Part shown: one piece after another, positions 44,301 to 57,753 of the stretch
Numbering within the stretch: the first letter of the stretch is position 1
Layout: each line of letters opens with the position of its first letter
Assembly: GCF_036588685.1 (NCBI RefSeq)
Contig: NC_086373.1
Span: 15,314,001 to 15,378,000 of the forward strand
Direction: 5' to 3'
From: Mytilus trossulus
Lineage: Eukaryota
Length of the DNA: 64,000 bases
Translations under genes and position numbers: made by a program
Notes under the pieces: model-generated
The model's input: only the letters and a program-made list of their open reading frames with translations
Databases searched by the model: none
What the model was told of the DNA's origin: nothing

Positions 44301-44686
44301 CTAAACTATAATCCTGGTACCTTTGATAACTATTTACACCACTGGGTCGATACCACTGCTGGTGGACGTTTCGTCCCCGAGGGTATCACCAGCCCAGTAG
44401 TCAACACTTCGGTGTTGACAGGAATATCAATAATGTGGTCATTTTAATAAATTTCCTGTTACAGAATTTTGAATTTTTCAAAAAACTAAGGATTTTCTTA
44501 TCCCAGGCATAGATTACCTTAGCCGTATTTGACACAACTTTTTGAATTTTGGATCCTCAATGCTCTTCAACTTTGTACGTGTTTGGCTTTATAAATATTT
44601 TGATATGAGCGTCACTGATGAGTCTTATGTAGACGAAACGCGAGTCTGGCGTACTAAATTATAATCCTGGTACCTTTGATAACTAT
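44301..44686 (+). mobile_element. Solo retrozyme copy (subfamily 1): a 353-bp unit plus a 33-bp terminal direct repeat; intact HHR core at 44615
   Basis: Homologous to the array monomer. ctaaa(c/t)tataatcctggtacctttgataactat occurs at both ends. Confidence 0.9.
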
Positions 44687-45738: not shown

Positions 45739-48700
45739 AGTCTTATGTAGACGAAACGCACGTCTGGCGTATGAAATTATAATCCTGGTACTTTTGATAA
45801 CTATTTACACCACTGGGTCGATGCCACTGCTGGTGGACGTTTCGTCCCCGAGGGTATCACCAGCCTAGTAGTCAGCACTTCGGTGTTGACATGAATATCA
45901 ATTATATGGTCATTTTTATAAATTTTCTGTTTACAAAACTTTGAACTTTTCGAAAAACTAAGGATTTTCTTACCCCAGGAGTAGATTACCTTAGCCGTAT
46001 TTGGCACAACTTTTTGGAATTTTTGGTCCTCAATGCTCTTCAACTTTGTATATGTTTTGGCTTTTTCACTATTTTGATCTGAGCGTCACTGATGAGTCTT
46101 ATGAAGACGAAACGTGCGTCTGGCGTATGAAATTATAATCCTGGTACTTTTGATAACTATTTACACCACTGGGTCGATGCCACTGCTGGTGGACGTTTCG
46201 TCCCCGAGGGTATCACCAGCCTAGTAGTCAGCACTTCGGTGTTGACATGAATATCAATTATATGGTCATTTTTATAAATTTTCTGTTTACAAAACTTTGA
46301 ACTTTTCGAAAAACTAAGGATTTTCTTACCCCAGGAGTAGATTACCTTAGCCGTATTTGGCACAACTTTTTGGAATTTTTGGTCCTCAATGCTCTTCAAC
46401 TTTGTATATGTTTTGGCTTTTTCACTATTTTGATCTGAGCGTCACTGATGAGTCTTATGTAGACGAAACGCGCGTCTGGCGTATGAAATTATAATCCTGA
46501 TACTTTTGATAACTATTTACACCACTGGGTCGATGCCACTGCTGGTGGACGTTTCGTCCCCGAGGGTATCACCAGCCTAGTAGTCAGCACTTTGGTGTTG
46601 ACATGAATATCAATTATATGGTCATTTTTATAAATTTTCTGTTTACAAAACTTTGAACTTTTCGAAAAACTAAGGATTTTCTTACCCCAGGAGTAGATTA
46701 CCTTAGCCGTATTTGGCACAACTTTTTGGAATTTTTGGTCCTCAATGCTCTTCAACTTTGTATATGTTTTGGCTTTTTCACTATTTTGATCTGAGCGTCA
46801 CTGATGAGTCTTATGTAGACGAAACGCGCGTCTGGCGTATGCAATTATAATCCTGGTACTTTTGATAACTATTTACACCACTGGGTCGATGCCACTGCTG
46901 GTGGACGTTTCGTCCCCGAGGGTATCACCAGCCTAGTAGTCAGCACTTCGGTGTTGACATAAATATCAATTATATGGTCATTTTTATAAATTTTCTGTTT
47001 ACAAAACTTTGAACTTTTCGAAAAACTAAGGATTTTCTTACCCCAGGAGTAGATTACCTAAACCGTATTTGGCACAACATTTTGGAATTTTTGGTCCTCA
47101 ATGCTCTTCAACTTTGTATATGTTTTGGCTTTTTCACAATTTTGATCTGAGCGTCACTGATGAGTCTTATGTAGACGAAACGCGCGTCTGGCGTATGAAA
47201 TTATAATCCTGGTACTTTTGATAACTATTTACACCACTGGGTCGATGCCACTGCTGGTGGACGTTTCGTCCCCGAGGGTATCACCAGCCTAGTAGTCAGC
47301 ACTTCGGTGTTGACATGAATATCAATTATATGGTCATTTTTATAAATTTTCTGTTTACAAAACTTTGAACTTTTCGAAAAACTAAGGATTTTCTTACCCC
47401 AGGAGTAGATTACCTTAGCCGTATTTGGCACAACTTTTTGAAATTTTTGGTCCTCAATGCTCTTCAACTTTGTATATGTTTTGGCTTTTTCACTATTTTG
47501 ATCTGAGCGTCACTGATGAGTCTTATGTAGACGAAACGCGCGTCTGGCGTATGAAATTATAATCCTGGTACTTTTGATAACTATTTACACCACTGGGTCG
47601 ATGCCACTGCTGGTGGACGTTTCGTCCCCGAGGGTATCACCAGCCTAGTAGTCAGCACTTTGGTGTTGACATGAATATCAATTATATGGTCATTTTTATA
47701 AATTTTCTGTTTACAAAACTTTGAACTTTTCGAAAAACTAAGGATTTTCTTACCCCAGGAGTAGATTACCTTAGCCGTATTTGGCACAACTTTTTGGAAT
47801 TTTTGGTCCTCAATGCTCTTCAACTTTGTATATGTTTTGGCTTTTTCACTATTTTGATCTGAGCGTCACTGATGAGTCTTATGTAGACGAAACGCGCGTC
47901 TGGCGTATGCAATTATAATCCTGGTACTTTTGATAACTATTTACACCACTGGGTCGATGCCACTGCTGGTGGACGTTTCGTCCCCGAGGGTATCACCAGC
48001 CTAGTAGTCAGCACTTCGGTGTTGACATAAATATCAATTATATGGTCATTTTTATAAATTTTCTGTTTACAAAACTTTGAACTTTTCGAAAAACTAAGGA
48101 TTTTCTTACCCCAGGAGTAGATTACCTAAACCGTATTTGGCACAACATTTTGGAATTTTTGGTCCTCAATGCTCTTCAACTTTGTATATGTTTTGGCTTT
48201 TTCACAATTTTGATCTGAGCGTCACTGATGAGTCTTATGTAGACGAAACGCGCGTCTGGCGTATGAAATTATAATCCTGGTACTTTTGATAACTATTTAC
48301 ACCACTGGGTCGATGCCACTGCTGGTGGACGTTTCGTCCCCGAGGGTATCACCAGCCTAGTAGTCAGCACTTCGGTGTTGACATGAATATCAATTATATG
48401 GTCATTTTTATAAATTTTCTGTTTACAAAACTTTGAACTTTTCGAAAAACTAAGGATTTTCTTACCCCAGGAGTAGATTACCTTAGCCGTATTTGGCACA
48501 ACTTTTTGAAATTTTTGGTCCTCAATGCTCTTCAACTTTGTATATGTTTTGGCTTTTTCACTATTTTGATCTGAGCGTCACTGATGAGTCTTATGTAGAC
48601 GAAACGCGCGTCTGGCGTATGAAATTATAATCCTGGTACTTTTGATAACTATTTACACCACTGGGTCGATGCCACTGCTGGTGGACGTTTCGTCCCCGAG

Positions 48701-50432
48701 GGTATCACCAGCCTAGTAGTCAGCACTTTGGTGTTGACATGAATATCAATTATATGGTCATTTTTATAAATTTTCTGTTTACAAAACTTTGAACTTTTCG
48801 AAAAACTAAGGATTTTCTTACCCCAGGAGTAGATTACCTTAGCCGTATTTGGCACAACTTTTTGGAATTTTTGGTCCTCAATGCTCTTCAACTTTGTATA
48901 TGTTTTGGCTTTTTCACTATTTTGATCTGAGCGTCACTGATGAGTCTTATGTAGACGAAACGCGCGTCTGGCGTATGCAATTATAATCCTGGTACTTTTG
49001 ATAACTATTTACACCACTGGGTCGATGCCACTGCTGGTGGACGTTTCGTCCCCGAGGGTATCACCAGCCTAGTAGTCAGCACTTCGGTGTTGACATAAAT
49101 ATCAATTATATGGTCATTTTTATAAATTTTCTGTTTACAAAACTTTGAACTTTTCGAAAAACTAAGGATTTTCTTACCCCAGGAGTAGATTACCTAAACC
49201 GTATTTGGCACAACATTTTGGAATTTTTGGTCCTCAATGCTCTTCAACTTTGTATATGTTTTGGCTTTTTCACAATTTTGATCTGAGCGTCACTGATGAG
49301 TCTTATGTAGACGAAACGCGCGTCTGGCGTATGAAATTATAATCCTGGTACTTTTGATAACTATTTACACCACTGGGTCGATGCCACTGCTGGTGGACGT
49401 TTCGTCCCCGAGGGTATCACCAGCCTAGTAGTCAGCACTTCGGTGTTGACATGAATATCAATTATATGGTCATTTTTATAAATTTTCTGTTTACAAAACT
49501 TTGAACTTTTCGAAAAACTAAGGATTTTCTTACCCCAGGAGTAGATTACCTTAGCCGTATTTGGCACAACTTTTTGAAATTTTTGGTCCTCAATGCTCTT
49601 CAACTTTGTATATGTTTTGGCTTTTTCACTATTTTGATCTGAGCGTCACTGATGAGTCTTATGTAGACGAAACGCGCGTCTGGCGTATGAAATTATAATC
49701 CTGGTACTTTTGATAACTATTTACACCACTGGGTCGATGCCACTGCTGGTGGACGTTTCGTCCCCGAGGGTATCACCAGCCTAGTAGTCAGCACTTTGGT
49801 GTTGACATGAATATCAATTATATGGTCATTTTTATAAATTTTCTGTTTACAAAACTTTGAACTTTTCGAAAAACTAAGGATTTTCTTACCCCAGGAGTAG
49901 ATTACCTTAGCCGTATTTGGCACAACTTTTTGGAATTTTTGGTCCTCAATGCTCTTCAACTTTGTATATGTTTTGGCTTTTTCACTATTTTGATCTGAGC
50001 GTCACTGATGAGTCTTATGTAGACGAAACGCGCGTCTGGCGTATGAAATTATAATCCTGGTACTTTTGATAACTATTTACACCACTGGGTCGATGCCACT
50101 GCTGGTGGACGTTTCGTCCCCGAGGGTATCACCAGCCTAGTAGTCAGCACTTCGGTGTTGACATGAATATCAATTATATGGTCATTTTTATAAATTTTCT
50201 GTTTACAAAACTTTGAACTTTTCGAAAAACTAAGGATTTTCTTACCCCAGGAGTAGATTACCTTAGCCGTATTTGGCACAACTTTTTGGAATTTTTGGTC
50301 CTCAATGCTCTTCAACTTTGTATATGTTTTGGCTTTTTCACTATTTTGATCTGAGCGTCACTGATGAGTCTTATGTAGACGAAACGCGCGTCTGGCGTAT
50401 GAAATTATAATCCTGGTACTTTTGATAACTAT
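45739..50432 (+). mobile_element. Tandem array of non-LTR retrozyme units (356 bp x about 13.2) with 13 type I hammerhead ribozymes
   Basis: CTGATGA occurs at 46089+356n (n=0..12). Each is in the context GCGTCA-CTGATGA-GTCT(TATGT)AGAC-GAAAC-GCGC-GTC^TGGCGT, with loop variants in the first copy. Confidence 0.95.
46439..46482 (+). ncRNA. Type I hammerhead ribozyme (representative copy); predicted cleavage after C46476
   Basis: Stem I GCGUCA/UGGCGU, core CUGAUGA, stem II GUCU/AGAC, GAAA, minimal stem III with palindromic GCGC loop, GUC triplet. Confidence 0.93.
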
Positions 50433-54112: not shown

Positions 54113-54250
54113 CAATTACTTACAAATGTTCTGTTCAATTACTTACAAATGTTCTGTTTAATTACTTACAAATGTTCTGTTTAATTACTTACAAATGTTC
54201 TGTTCAATTACTTACAAATGTTCTGTGCAATTACTTACAAATGTCCTGTT
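54113..54250. repeat. 23-bp tandem repeat, about 6 copies
   Basis: caattacttacaaatgttctgtt. Confidence 0.9.
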
Positions 54251-54520
54251 TGCAAGGATCTTCAACATCGTAATTGGTTTGACATTTAAACTTTTTTGAT
54301 TCAAGTGATAAAGGTGAGTCTTGATTTCAAAACTCGCATCAGGCACACTAGAATATAAGCTGAGAATAATTGACGAATTATGATATCAAACATCAGTCTA
54401 TTTCATTTTTTTTTTTGTAAAATTGTATAACGTTAGTACATATGGATAAAGAAAGACAGTTTAAACTTAACCTTTTTTTGTTTATTTCCTAATGACGACA
54501 AAATGCTGTAAAACAGATAT

Positions 54521-54524
<4 letters not shown>

Positions 54525-54551
<27 letters not shown>

Positions 54552-55250
54552 CAACTCGTCTAAACATCAACCCAACAATGTTAGATCTGTAAATTTGCTT
54601 TCGCAAATTTTTGGTTCTTCCCTCGCCGGGATTCGAACCCATGCTACTGTGATATCGTGACACCAAATCGCCTGCACTGTAGCCGTCCCGCTAGACCACA
54701 CGACCACCTGGGCTCTCAAAAAAAGAGCTTTCGGTGGCCATATGTTACCTTTCCACGTCAGTTTTTAATCTAGCGGCGTACTACAGTACATGATATATAA
54801 GGCATGAAGATGTTATTGTTACAGATCAGCTAAATTATCTATAGTAAAGGATCCTACAAATTAATGTAAGATACAGTCACAGAAAATAATTATATTCATA
54901 AGTACGTCTGAGTCAGTGACAACCCTACAACAGATGTATCCATCGGATCGCCATCGATGATGGTGATACATGGCTGTGTACATAATGTATATACAACTCG
55001 TCTAAACATCAACCCAACAATGTTAGATCTGTAAATTTGCTTTCGCAAATTTTTGGTTCTTCCCTCGCCGTGAAGAACCAAAAATTTGCGAAAGCAAATT
55101 TACAGATCTAACATTGTTGGGTTGATGTTTAGACGAGTTGTATATACATTATGTACACAGCCATGTATCACCATCATCGATGGCGATCCGATGGATACAT
55201 CTGTTGTAGGGTTGTCACTGACTCAGACGTACTTATATATATATATATAT
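54525..55250 (-). mobile_element. tRNA-derived (Pol III A/B box) repeat, 442-bp period, with a 165-bp terminal inverted duplication, inserted in (TA)n
   Basis: Minus-strand A-box-like TGGTCGTGTGG (54706-54696) and B box GGTTCGAATCC (54639-54629). Direct repeat 54551../54993..; inverted arms 54898-55062 and 55072-55236. Confidence 0.85.
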
Positions 55251-57753
55251 CTGTTTTATTTTTCTAAAAGCCAACTGTTAAAAATCAACAAATAAAAGCT
55301 GAAATATCGGAAATTCCTAATTTAATAAAAAAAAAAAAGCATATGTTTTCGTCCGACCAATCCAATTTTTATCTCCTATACCCTAATCAAACGTTTGTCA
55401 TTTTTCCATTAATCACAATTAGAGTCCAAATGCCTCCCAATAAAATTCACTTAGGTAAAACAGAGTACAATAACAAATAAATCATCACCTACCAGCAAAT
55501 AAATGTATATTCCTCCTTAGCGTTTACTTATAACCTAGTACATGTAAATGCAGAGTCCAATACAATATGCTTTAGAGTATTTGCTGGTGAAACTAATTTA
55601 AAAGAGGGGTGATAGATACCAGAGGGACAGTCAAAACCATAGATTGAAAACAAACTGACAACGCCATGGCTAATGTATATTGAGAAATATTTACACAATA
55701 AAAAAACTCAAAGATGCCGGGCGAATAATTGTGTACGTAATAGGCCTGTTTTGTCTACAAAAGACTCATTAGTGACGCTAGTACCATCAAAGAATCAAAG
55801 CCAAATATAAAAAAATAGCTGCAGATCATTGATTGAAATATAACCTCATTAAAGTCTGTAGTACCATTTTGTTTGTACCTCTAATCGGGGACTTTCAATC
55901 AAAAGAGTTATCCGTAATGTATCAAGCGCAAACGTTATTTGACATTTTATTTTGTTCTGATGCGTATTTAATCATTGCCCTTCGACATTTAAACCCTTCG
56001 GCTTTCCAAACTGTTGGTGTCAAGCATACCCGATGTATGTTATTAAAATTTACATTTCTTGTGAACAGGAAAGGGTGTTATAAGTTTGGTCTAACTTATA
56101 TTGGCTGTCTTTCAGTTCCCGAGGTTAATATTCGCCCAATAACCATTGACCCGATTTAAATTATAAAATGTTTCATTCATTAATATTTTAAGTAGAGTCA
56201 AAAGTAGTTTACTTGTGTCCAAATCACAAATCCAATAAATTCACAAAGAAGATAAAAAAAAAAAATACAGAATCGCCAGTACTTCAAAAGCAGGAGACCG
56301 GCACGGTACGTCACAGTTACTGTTTGCACATCATGTATCATTTGCATGTAAATCAACCATTAGTCAAAAGTCACATTTCGGAATAGGGACAAACTTGGTT
56401 TAAAATTAGAAAGCCAAAGATTTAAGACCGTGAAAACATTATGGTAATGTATTTTATCAAACACATATGTTATTGTGCAAAAACTACAACTCTCTCAAGC
56501 CATGTTGACATTAGACTGTTAGGGGGGAACTGTTTAATTTCCTTTGGTATTTATGATGTTTATCATCAAGCATTTTTTTTCATTGATGTGTTGAGCTTAC
56601 CTATTGATGTTCAATGTAAAATTGAGAATGGAAATGATGAATGTGTCAAAGTGACAACAACCCGACCATAAAGCAGACAACATTGATGTTGAAAGAACAT
56701 GATGATTTTTTTTCTAAGCAAAAATGTCGTGCTTAGTATTCTTCATTTCACGAAAGCATCAGTTGGATATATAACATTTTCTTATAAGAATCGTGTTGCT
56801 TTTATACTTAAGTTGCACATAAATACCAATCGACATAGCCAACAAGTGGCACTGTAATAGCTTGCAAAATCTTTAAATTCACATTTTAAAGTAGGATGTT
56901 TGAAAACTTGATAGGTCATTAATGTTAAAAAGTATCGATAAAAATGCAGATCAATATATTTTTATAAAACTTTGATATCACTCTCAAGAGAATTGGCGTC
57001 AAGGGTTTTAAGTGAACTACATTTCCTGTTATTTCAAAGAACAACTGTGTTGCTTTCTAGATGTGCTTTTAATTCTTTATACCAACTCTATTGTTGTACC
57101 ATATAAGACTTAGCCAAGCAATTTTCTCTGTGCTACTTTCAGGATATTGCACAAGACATATCATAACTGATAAGAGTTTTCAATTATAATAATTGAGCAC
57201 CTTTGTACAATGAGTAGTAAAATAACATATACTGAGTCTGAATGTTTACAATGATTGGCATAATGGGAAACTATACAAACATTGCATTTTACGTTTATCA
57301 GTGTTCTTGTCCAAGCAAAGCTTTTAGTAGCTAGTGGAATGAATAGATGTGCCTACTGATGCTGGGATGTATTGACAGCCTCTGATTGGCGAGAAATACT
57401 TCGTCAATTGATACTCATCTCTAGTTCGATAAAGAATAGTAACTACCATCGGGTCATCAATCAAGGAGTTTCACAAGTACCCATTAATAGAATATCTAAA
57501 CTTCAGTCTGGACCGGTCTACCTAGCACTACCACCGGATATTGATTTGATGTCGTATTGCAGGTAAAAATCACCTGTTAAACGCTTCATTTAATTGTACA
57601 TCAGACACAGGACTGTGTTTATGGAACTAATAGGACTTTTCATACAGTATTTATCATATAATTGTAGGCTTAATGTCATTGATTATCAGTAATTTGTGGA
57701 AAGTATGAGAAATATGATACGAAAACATTTTCATCATTCGAAGAATATGAATA

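What the first reader, a model, noticed from the sequence alone, without database searches (positions are those of the whole stretch)
54525..55250. Circularly permuted tRNA-headed Pol III unit inserted in (TA)n with a Penelope-style terminal inversion
Seen: on the minus strand the element reads [post-B-box segment, 55070 down]-[body]-T7 (54724-54718)-[tRNA-like head with A box and GGTTCGAATCC B box]-[the same post-B-box segment]-(TA)n. The period is 442 bp. A Pol III terminator therefore sits directly before the Pol III promoter, so the putative transcript (head to T7, one unit long) was integrated in permuted order, with its 3' junction at an internal ...GTTGTATA fused to a TA microsatellite. 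The other end is a 165-bp inverted copy (54898-55062 / 55072-55236, 9-nt spacer) ending in (TA)n again. Known: ordinary SINEs integrate head-to-tail, whereas partial-tandem plus inverted ends and microsatellite targeting are hallmarks of Penelope-like elements. Inference: a SINE-like non-autonomous element copied from a circular (or end-to-end template-jumped) Pol III RNA by a Penelope-type RT, i.e. a ribozyme-free analogue of the retrozymes in this window. I do not know of a description of this, but cannot search.
Basis: partly seen in the sequence, partly recalled or inferred. Interest (0 to 1): 0.8.

Follow-up and report, generated by a model that had tools for sequence, protein, structure and literature searches.

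The report
Penelope-type tRNA-headed tandem retroelement copy
This is one very young copy of an abundant, gene-less mussel jumping element: 442-base units with a tRNA-like promoter head and no hammerhead ribozyme land in TA-repeat tracts as tandem and mirror-image arrays, in the manner of Penelope-like retrotransposons, which gives a handle on how those enzymes copy RNA.

Summary
Window 54552-55062 (minus strand) is 1.16 units of a 442-bp repeat with A- and B-box matches and a T7 run just before the head. 55072-55236 is a perfect 165-nt inverted copy behind a 9-nt loop. Both outer ends are fused to (TA)n.

It is one copy of a family with at least 5,700 insertion arms in this 1.3-Gb genome. The 3' ends are fixed at two internal TA-rich sites joined to (TA)n. 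The 5' ends vary, and arrays run from 0.1 to more than 11 units. About a quarter of loci have head-to-head inverted arms. Two intact C-terminal-endonuclease Penelope-like families in the same genome end in (TA)n with the same architecture. One locus joins such an element head-to-head with a unit array.

Stranded RNA-seq shows abundant one-strand RNA that is continuous round the whole unit, including across the T7, with no discrete ends. So Penelope-type retrotransposition is well supported. A ribozyme-less circular RNA template stays plausible but unproven: some long arrays are perfectly homogeneous, others are not. A head-to-T7 Pol III monomer is not the main RNA.

This scan had already reported the family on other DNA of this genome (s1-820576, s1-823567, s1-826765, s1-829946). 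I found no published description. I class it as a new variant of a known kind.

The parts
54509..54524 (.). Left flank of the target. TAAAACAGAT (54509-54518) recurs inverted beyond the right arm.
   Evidence: (I4).
54525..54551 (.). (TA)13 microsatellite abutting the 3' end of the left arm (target and primer site).
   Evidence: The same junction occurs 4,787 times genome-wide.
54552..54717 (-). Unit positions q1-q166: tRNA-like head plus the first 3' module, ending at site A (...TTTAGACGAGTTG|TATA).
   Evidence: Site A is the 3' end of 49 of 77 arms in the census.
54688..54698 (-). A-box-like motif TGGTCTAGCGG (9/11 to TRGCNNAGTGG).
   Evidence: No cloverleaf found by ARAGORN or Rfam.
54629..54639 (-). 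B-box motif GGTTCGAATCC (11/11 to GGTTCGANTCC).
54718..54724 (-). T7 run directly upstream of the head. In the predicted RNA fold it is the loop of a GCUCU/AGAGC hairpin. RNA reads run through it.
54725..55062 (-). Unit positions q435 down to q98 (body). Holds an internal, unused-here copy of site B (54898-54912) and a second copy of site A (54988-55006).
   Evidence: (D3).
55063..55071 (-). 9-nt spacer, equal to q89-97 of the left arm (one mismatch at its end). It is the loop of the fold-back.
55072..55236 (+). Inverted arm, unit q98-q262, 100% identical to 54898-55062, ending at site B (...CAGACGTACT|TAT).
   Evidence: (I1). The site-B junction occurs 934 times genome-wide.
55237..55250 (.). 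(TA)7 at the 3' end of the right arm.
55249..55258 (.). ATCTGTTTTA, an inverted copy of the left flank. It implies that the right arm was copied from the left arm through its (TA)n into the flank.
   Evidence: (I4). Not seen at 10 other head-to-head loci.

Best explanation
The stretch is one recent insertion of a non-autonomous retroelement family. Its 442-bp unit has a tRNA-derived Pol III-type promoter head (A and B boxes) and no hammerhead ribozyme.

An RNA of the head's sense strand that contains the T-run/head junction, so is longer than one unit or circular, is reverse-transcribed at a nick in a (TA)n microsatellite. The enzyme is the RT-endonuclease of a (TA)n-targeting Penelope-like element; two candidate families, here called PLE-A and PLE-B, have a C-terminal GIY-YIG domain.

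Priming happens where the (TA)n DNA end meets one of two homologous TA-ended modules inside the unit: site A (...AGACGAGTTG-TATA) or site B (...AGACGTACT-TAT). Every arm therefore ends at one of these two internal points. Synthesis runs a variable distance towards the RNA 5' end, from 0.1 to more than 11 units.

About a quarter of insertions gain a second arm in the opposite orientation. This arises either by priming from the other DNA end (contiguous or heterologous junctions) or by the first cDNA folding back and copying itself (symmetric junctions). The window copy is of the fold-back kind.

Shown: the family anatomy, the target, the polarity of the ends, strand-specific RNA that crosses the T-run, and the presence and identical architecture of (TA)n-targeting PLEs. 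Inferred: which PLE supplies the enzyme, and the priming and fold-back steps.

For the form of the template my odds are about 45% unit-length circular RNA copied round and round, 35% linear multimeric read-through transcripts of existing arrays, and 20% repeated template jumping or a mixture.
For: **Family and ends**
- The genome search gave 95 matches at 96-100% identity out of 1,235 candidates, on all large contigs, as short arrays with 440-442-bp spacing.
- In 39 independent loci, 62 of 77 arms end at site A (49) or site B (13). Their 5' ends are scattered from q1 to q417.
- Genome-wide there are 4,787 site-A and 934 site-B junctions with (TA)n and 8,752 internal site-A copies. The control patterns gave 0.
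- A third TA-rich stretch (q358-371) is never used as an end. The two used sites share an upstream module, TTGTNGGGTTG...AGACG.

**Inverted arms**
- 11 loci have head-to-head arms.
- Some are symmetric: q88/98 in the window, q187/187, q55/49.
- Some are contiguous: q274|q271 in L012 and q269|q253 in L023.

**Penelope link**
- Craig et al. 2021 (PMC8557442) describe 5' truncation, partial tandems, adjacent inverted 5'-truncated copies, (TA)n bias and loss of hammerheads for PLEs. They also describe multicopy head-to-tail non-autonomous derivatives.
- This genome has many intact PLE ORFs.
- PLE-A and PLE-B have a C-terminal GIY-YIG domain behind a Cys-rich linker and end in (TA)n.
- 9 of 30 GIY-YIG loci carry the unit within 1.5 kb. 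Eight of these belong to the 13 loci of the (TA)n-ending families.
- PLE-A copies show the same inverted-arm classes. L054 is a direct head-to-head junction of a 5'-truncated PLE-A with unit q299, both outer ends in (TA)n and no TA between the arms.

**RNA**
- 4,401 reads of about 8.7 million records read from a stranded RNA run lay on the stretch.
- Depth was 870-1,950 with the first mate on the + strand against 9-94 on the - strand.
- Coverage was continuous over the T7/head junction, and 770 reads closed the unit.
- No places where molecules begin or end were found, and no length change in the T-run reached 10% of reads.

**Template**
- L093+L094 is an 11.4 + 11.8-unit double array with 19 of 21 full units identical and T7 at all 23 junctions.
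- T-run length is array-specific.
- Period-2 or period-3 variant patterns occur in four arrays.
- One unit folds with its ends paired, at -142 kcal/mol and z = -5.3.
Against: - No partner is proven. The similarity of the unit's 3' ends to PLE-B is only about ACT(T)AT plus (TA)n. PLE-A and the Naiad 3' regions share nothing with the unit.
- None of the 39 unit loci has PLE-A or PLE-B beside it. The heterologous junction is a single case.
- Co-location could reflect only a shared liking for (TA)n.
- The library's strand convention was not calibrated, so 'sense strand' assumes the usual dUTP design.
- Against a circle: several arrays are heterogeneous. Mean distance within arrays is 0.84% against 2.1% between them, and L063, L017 and L020 are internally diverse.
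- The RNA junction has the genomic T-run length. That is what read-through of arrays gives, and not what ligating ragged Pol III ends would give.
- 5' ends are enriched at q8-39 (10 of 58 arms), as a linear template starting near the head could produce.
- The RNA pool is dominated by a variant (q418C/q422C) that is a minority among the sampled DNA copies. This is unexplained.
Confidence: 0.75

Rival explanations
1. Ordinary LINE-dependent tRNA-SINE. It would insert head-first as a single unit and later be duplicated locally into tandems and palindromes by recombination, as described for some bivalve SINEs.
For: A- and B-box head and a microsatellite-like tail. Tandem-like and palindromic SINE structures are reported in bivalves (PMC11481361).
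Against: Most arms do not start at the head; 5' ends range from q1 to q417. Arrays end at two internal sites rather than at a tail following the body. Thousands of independent arrays have the same end phase. A 23-unit double array is almost perfectly homogeneous across inverted arms. No LINE-like 3' tail is present.
Confidence: 0.04
2. DNA-level spread: a Helitron/Helentron-type rolling-circle transposon, or extrachromosomal circular DNA of a satellite that is amplified and re-integrated at AT-rich sites.
For: The insertions lie in TA tracts and form head-to-tail multimers, and some arrays are homogeneous.
Against: The ends are polar: the 3' end is fixed and the 5' end variable. No 5'-TC or CTRR-3' plus hairpin termini are present. 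There are head-to-head arms, including a heterologous one with a PLE. Abundant strand-specific RNA is present. The same architecture is seen in RT-encoding PLE copies.
Confidence: 0.05
3. TRIMp3/Helenus-type non-autonomous LTR retrotransposon. A tRNA-derived promoter would sit inside an LTR, and arrays would be LTR-internal-LTR chains mobilised by a Gypsy integrase.
For: Helenus families with tRNA-like LTRs exist in Mytilida, and tandem arrays of such elements are reported (PMC10886601). The stretch from the last T of the T-run to q174 reads TG...CA.
Against: The 5' ends are variable and there are two alternative 3' ends. The junctions are (TA)n rather than 4-6-bp duplications. No TGG primer-binding site follows the putative LTR, and a pyrimidine run stands where a polypurine tract should be (read directly from the unit).
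Confidence: 0.02
4. For this locus only: the inverted arm is an assembly artefact, for example a fold-back chimeric long read, and the real insertion is a simple 1.2-unit arm.
For: The arms are 100% identical over 165 nt with a 9-nt loop. I could not lay reads across 55063-55071.
Against: The right arm ends at the other canonical 3' site and in its own (TA)n, then continues into unique flank. Head-to-head arms recur at 11 of 39 loci with different junctions. They are a published PLE hallmark.
Confidence: 0.06

Closest known systems
Animal non-LTR retrozymes (Cervera and de la Pena 2020, PMC7229834; Li et al. 2026 preprint 10.64898/2026.07.22.740005)
   Same: Dispersed short tandem arrays of a non-coding unit of a few hundred bp. 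Highly expressed in mussel. The RNA is continuous round the unit. Thought to be mobilised by Penelope-like elements. HHR retrozyme arrays in this same window also have one fixed 3' end.
   Different: No hammerhead motif: Rfam gives no hit at E<=1 on young units or E<=10 on an older copy. A tRNA-like A/B-box head and a T-run take its place. Circularity is not shown. The retrozyme and this unit share no sequence.
Non-autonomous Penelope-like derivatives such as MRC1 of Chlamys (Craig et al. 2021, PMC8557442)
   Same: No ORF, pseudo-LTR and multicopy head-to-tail insertions, microsatellite targeting, no hammerhead, very low divergence.
   Different: Those share their 3' ends with an autonomous family and have no Pol III-type head. 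Here 3' similarity to a partner is at most about 7 nt plus (TA)n. The host is an animal whose candidate partners have a C-terminal endonuclease.
tRNA-derived SINEs of bivalves (PMC11481361, PMC4758252)
   Same: tRNA-related head with A and B boxes, 200-700 bp, simple-repeat 3' end, non-autonomous.
   Different: Insertions are arrays with fixed internal 3' ends, variable 5' ends and inverted arms, not head-first single copies with target-site duplications. The partner type is a PLE, not a LINE.
TRIMp3 elements (Cassandra, Helenus, Ajax; PMC10886601)
   Same: A small-RNA-gene promoter embedded in a non-autonomous retroelement that forms tandem arrays. Helenus occurs in Mytilida.
   Different: No LTR termini, PBS or PPT, and no fixed 5' end. 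The integration footprint is target-primed, not integrase-type.
L1 twin priming and RT snap-back inversions
   Same: Head-to-head arms whose junctions are either contiguous on the template or symmetric hairpins.
   Different: Here the frequency is far higher, the arms can be many units long, and both 3' ends sit in a microsatellite.

Membership tests
Penelope-like non-autonomous element (PLE-mobilised) | Fixed 3' end with variable 5' truncation | tested here: met
   62 of 77 arms end at site A or site B, and 5' ends range from q1 to q417. 4,787 + 934 junctions genome-wide.
Penelope-like non-autonomous element (PLE-mobilised) | Partial tandem (pseudo-LTR) or multicopy head-to-tail insertion | tested here: met
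   40 of 69 complete arms exceed one unit and 17 exceed two. The longest sampled arm pair is 11.4 + 11.8 units.
Penelope-like non-autonomous element (PLE-mobilised) | Adjacent inverted 5'-truncated copy | tested here: met
   Head-to-head arms at 11 of 39 loci, including the window. PLE-A copies L050, L051 and L059 show the same.
Penelope-like non-autonomous element (PLE-mobilised) | Microsatellite target shared with an autonomous PLE of the same genome | tested here: met
   PLE-A and PLE-B end in (TA)n. The unit lies within 1.5 kb in 8 of their 13 loci.
Penelope-like non-autonomous element (PLE-mobilised) | 3'-terminal sequence shared with the autonomous partner | tested here: inconclusive
   Only about ACT(T)AT+(TA)n is shared with PLE-B, and TTTAGAC with a PLE-B relative. 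Nothing is shared with PLE-A or Naiads.
Penelope-like non-autonomous element (PLE-mobilised) | Dependence on PLE RT-EN | not testable with these tools
   One heterologous PLE-A|unit head-to-head junction (L054) is the only direct hint.
Animal non-LTR retrozyme | Type I hammerhead ribozyme in each unit | tested here: not met
   No Hammerhead hit in L009 or L001 at E<=1, nor in an older copy at E<=10. A CUGACGA...GAAA look-alike at the junction lacks the 15.1-16.1 pair and helix I.
Animal non-LTR retrozyme | Unit-length circular RNA | tested here: inconclusive
   Reads are continuous round the unit with no ends. Short reads cannot separate circles from multimers.
Animal non-LTR retrozyme | Dispersed tandem arrays of a non-coding unit of 150-600 bp | tested here: met
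tRNA-derived SINE (LINE-dependent) | Internal Pol III promoter (A and B boxes) in a tRNA-related head | tested here: met
   B box 11/11, A box 9/11, 48 nt apart. No cloverleaf is detected, however.
tRNA-derived SINE (LINE-dependent) | Head-first single insertions ending in the tail, with target-site duplications | tested here: not met
   Only about 2 of 58 arms start at q1. The ends are internal to the head-to-T-run unit.
TRIMp3 / Helenus | Two LTRs with TG..CA, PBS, PPT and a short TSD | tested here: not met
   Variable 5' ends, two 3' ends, (TA)n junctions, and no PBS or PPT next to the putative LTR.
Helitron / Helentron | 5'-TC ... CTRR-3' with a 3' hairpin, inserted at AT or TT without truncation polarity | tested here: not met
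   The ends read ...GAGTTG and ...GTACT before TA. 5' truncation is polar.

The most novel reading that the evidence does not exclude
The family propagates through a unit-length circular RNA made without any ribozyme. On this reading the 5' and 3' ends of a tRNA-headed transcript are brought together by the long terminal helix and sealed, or processed and sealed, by host tRNA-processing or ligase enzymes. A (TA)n-targeting Penelope RT then copies the circle round and round, which gives homogeneous arrays of any length. It would be a ribozyme-free counterpart of retrozymes and a natural rolling-circle reverse transcription system.
Probability: 0.35. Interest if true: 0.8.

Novelty: new variant of a known kind. 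Interest (0 to 1): 0.6.

Why it matters
How Penelope-like elements integrate is still undefined: why they make tandem and inverted copies, and how they pick microsatellites and templates. This family is short, non-coding, very young and highly transcribed, and is present in thousands of insertions. It has two alternative, sequence-defined 3' entry points and both fold-back and two-primer types of inversion, so it is a compact natural substrate for in vitro target-primed reverse transcription.

If its template is a ribozyme-less circle, then hammerheads are not needed for the retrozyme life style, and a second cellular route to abundant small circular RNAs exists in animals.

It is also practically relevant. 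At roughly 0.3-0.4% of a mussel genome, such arrays and palindromes are likely to be mis-annotated as satellites or SINEs and to disturb assemblies.

Tried and rejected
- **Hammerhead.** A CUGACG(A/U)...GAAA plus hairpin look-alike sits at the T-run/head junction. Rfam gives no hammerhead there at E<=1 (young units) or E<=10 (older copy). The 15.1-16.1 pair and helix I are missing, and core positions vary among older copies. I rejected it as a ribozyme; at most it is a relic.
- **tRNA gene.** ARAGORN finds none at default, 90% or 80% thresholds. Only forced intron models at 80-90% of threshold, or 70%, give inconsistent calls.
- **Naiad partner.** Eight 3' regions of N-terminal-EN PLEs contain no (TA)n and no similarity to the unit.
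- **Shared 3' module.** A motif search for AGACG...(TA)n outside the family found nothing in the PLE loci held.
- **PLE next to arrays.** There is no PLE-A or PLE-B within the flanks of 39 unit loci.
- **Monomer bottleneck as a rule.** Within-array distances show it does not hold for all arrays.
- **Inverted flank duplication as a family trait.** It is seen only at the window locus.
- **Literature.** An exact 25-mer of the unit occurs in no paper of the library. Searches combining PLE, SINE, tRNA and tandem terms gave no description of such an element.
- **Genome fetch.** I worked with smaller pieces.

Full report
**1. The observation**

Unit positions (q) are counted on the minus strand from the G that follows the T-run.
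- The left arm runs from q88-98 (55062-55071) through q442/q1 (54718/54717) to q166 (54552), about 1.2 units. It is then fused to (TA)13 at 54525-54551.
- The 442-bp period is exact. Positions 54552-54620 and 54994-55062 are identical.
- A perfect B box sits at 54629-54639. A 9/11 A box sits at 54688-54698, 48 nt upstream of the B box on the minus strand. T7 is at 54718-54724.
- The inverted arm 55072-55236 equals 54898-55062 without a mismatch. It is separated by 9 nt that are themselves unit sequence (q89-97). It ends ...GACGTACT fused to (TA)7.
- Neither ARAGORN nor Rfam recognises a tRNA, so 'tRNA-like' means the promoter boxes only.
- There is no other copy in the window.

**2. The family**

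The window's genome (1.3 Gb; the window is C1:15314001-15378000) holds the unit on every large contig at 96-100% identity. It occurs as short arrays with 440-442-bp spacing. I mapped 39 independent loci onto the unit.
- Of 77 arms whose 3' end is visible, 49 stop at site A (...TTTAGACGAGTTG|TATA, q166). Another 13 stop at site B (...CTCAGACGTACT|TAT, q259). Nearly all are followed by (TA)n.
- The remaining 15 are internal rearrangements or arrays that run on.
- 5' ends lie anywhere from q1 to q417, with a mild excess at q8-39 (10 of 58).
- 18 of 58 arms are preceded directly by (TA)n, so a simple insertion reads (TA)n-[5'-truncated array]-(TA)n.
- Arms range from 35 bp to more than 11 units. 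40 of 69 complete arms exceed one unit.
- Exact-pattern counts give 4,787 site-A junctions, 934 site-B junctions and 8,752 internal site-A copies. Reversed control patterns give none. That is at least 5,700 arms and roughly 4-5 Mb.
- A third TA-rich stretch (q358-371) is never an end. Sites A and B share an upstream module (TTGTNGGGTTG...AGACG). End choice is therefore not mere TA microhomology.

**3. Inverted arms**

Eleven of the 39 loci have head-to-head arms, each ending at site A or B in (TA)n.
- Some junctions are contiguous on the template, as in twin priming. In L012 one arm ends at q274 and the other starts at q271. L023 has q269 and q253.
- Others are symmetric: q88/98 in the window, q187/187 in L002 and q55/49 in L025.
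- At the window locus the arms are identical and the loop is 9 nt. The right arm is followed by an inverted copy of 9-10 nt of the left flank (ATCTGTTTTA).
- I read this as follows. The first cDNA folded back and copied itself, slipped from site B to the (TA)n, and ran a few bases into the flank. No other locus shows this flank copy.

**4. Who moves it**

Craig et al. 2021 list the same traits for Penelope-like elements (PLEs): 5' truncation, partial tandems, an adjacent inverted 5'-truncated copy, (TA)n bias and, in Naiads, no hammerhead. They also describe non-autonomous derivatives with multicopy head-to-tail insertions.
- A GIY-YIG search finds many PLEs with long open frames here. Some have an N-terminal endonuclease (Naiad-like) and some a C-terminal one.
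- Two C-terminal families, PLE-A and PLE-B, carry a Cys-rich linker before GIY-YIG and end in (TA)n.
- Nine of 30 GIY-YIG loci contain the unit within 1.5 kb. Eight of these are among the 13 loci of the (TA)n-ending families.
- PLE-A copies show the same two kinds of inverted arm.
- In L054 a 5'-truncated PLE-A abuts unit q299 head-to-head with no TA between them, while both outer ends lie in (TA)n. This is most simply one insertion event that used two RNAs.
- Against a specific partner: 3' similarity is limited to about ACT(T)AT+(TA)n with PLE-B, and Naiad 3' regions share nothing. No unit locus has PLE-A or PLE-B in its flanks.

**5. RNA**

One stranded paired RNA-seq run of the same species label laid 4,401 reads, of about 8.7 million records read, on 54540-55000.
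- Depth is 870-1,950 with the first mate on the + strand, against 9-94 on the other. This is real RNA of one strand.
- If the library is of the usual dUTP type, it is the strand of the head. I did not calibrate this.
- Coverage continues over the T7/head junction, at about 870 against 1,100-1,900 beside it. Part of the dip comes from four variant positions and a 1-nt indel nearby.
- 770 reads join 54987 back to 54546, which closes the unit.
- No position collects starts or ends, and no T-run length change reaches 10% of reads.
- A head-to-T7 monomer is therefore not the main species. The RNA is circular or multimeric.
- 79-94% of reads carry q422C/q418C, a minority variant among the DNA copies I sampled.
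- Contigs of runs whose library type is not on record, under three organism labels, hold 70-94% of the unit's 31-mers.

**6. Circle or multimer**

For iterative copying of a unit-length template:
- L093+L094 (C1:2825612-2835843) is an 11.4 + 11.8-unit head-to-head double array. Nineteen of its 21 full units are identical, and all 23 junctions have T7.
- T-run length is array-specific. L023 has T6 in both arms and L065 has T6 throughout.
- Arrays carry private variants shared by all their units.
- Four arrays show period-2 or period-3 patterns.
- One unit folds with its ends paired in a long helix and the T-run as a hairpin loop, at -142 kcal/mol and z = -5.3.

Against:
- Several arrays are internally diverse. 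Mean distance is 0.84% within arrays and 2.1% between them, and L063, L017 and L020 stand out.
- The RNA junction has the genomic T-run length.
- 5' ends are somewhat enriched near the head.

My odds are circle 45%, linear multimer 35%, and jumping or a mixture 20%.

**7. Comparison and novelty**

The element works like an animal retrozyme or a non-autonomous PLE. It fails the retrozyme membership test on the hammerhead. It fails the SINE test on insertion form. It fails the Helenus/TRIMp3 and Helitron tests on termini (the sequence itself).

The hammerhead retrozyme arrays in this same window (45739-50432 and 44301-44686) also share a fixed 3' end...GATAACTAT. They have no sequence in common with the unit.

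I found no paper describing a tRNA-headed, PLE-type tandem element.

Earlier notes of this scan on other DNA of the genome reached the same reading. They are not independent evidence, and I tested the claims myself except the 'shared 3' signal', which I find inconclusive.

Verdict: a real feature and a new variant of a known kind.

Noticed in passing
window 54509-54518 and 55249-55258: The two flanks of the insertion are inverted copies of each other for 9-10 nt beyond the (TA)n (TAAAACAGAT / ATCTGTTTTA). This fits fold-back synthesis running into the target flank. It was not seen at 10 other head-to-head loci.
   Followed up: partly
window 45739-50432 and 44301-44686: A 13.2-copy array and a solo copy of a 356-bp hammerhead-type retrozyme both end at the same ...CTGGTAC(T/C)TTTGATAACTAT. 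Rfam reports no family at gathering score anywhere in the window.
   Followed up: partly
L093+L094 (G000:C1:2825612-2835843): An 11.4 + 11.8-unit head-to-head double array of the family. Nineteen of 21 full units are identical, with one private change per arm. The junction is q11|q263.
   Followed up: yes
window 54734-54762 (reads of run X24): The RNA pool differs from the window copy. 54742 A>G is in 798 of 850 first-mate-on-+ reads, 54738 C>G in 658 of 837, and one A of the run at 54762 is missing in 1,243 of 1,382. This variant is a minority among the DNA copies sampled, so few loci or a persistent RNA dominate expression.
   Followed up: partly
L038, L050, L054, L059 (PLE-A 3' ends): An optional 41-nt extension (ATTCTGTACACCGCTTGAAAAG...TTTTTGTA) lies between the PLE-A 3' end and the (TA)n. 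It is the same at different loci, so it is the published one-sided 'tail' and is element-derived here.
   Followed up: partly
L085, L086, L090, L092 (3' regions of 1056-aa Naiad-like PLEs): Long 3' UTRs built of internal ~250-bp repeats and containing a B-box-like GGTTCAATCC next to AGCTAGCTATAAAACC. There is no (TA)n at these ends, unlike what is published for Naiads.
   Followed up: no
L029 3093-3136 (-), L056 3128-3171 (+), L048 342-385 (-): Near-threshold type I hammerhead matches (33.2, 29.1 and 28.1 bits; gathering score 34) in elements lying beside unit arrays or PLE copies.
   Followed up: no
window 54113-54250: A 23-bp minisatellite (6 copies, 95% matches) lies 275 bp upstream of the insertion.
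   Followed up: no
unit q8-39 (window 54679-54710, minus strand): 5' ends of arms are about 2.4 times enriched here (10 of 58). This is the GC-rich 5' strand of the predicted terminal helix. It could be an RT pause site or the start of a linear template.
   Followed up: partly
L059 2286-3217 (locus coordinates): Three ~65%-identical relatives of unit q79-312, spaced about 400 bp apart next to a PLE-A copy. This suggests a much older related family.
   Followed up: no
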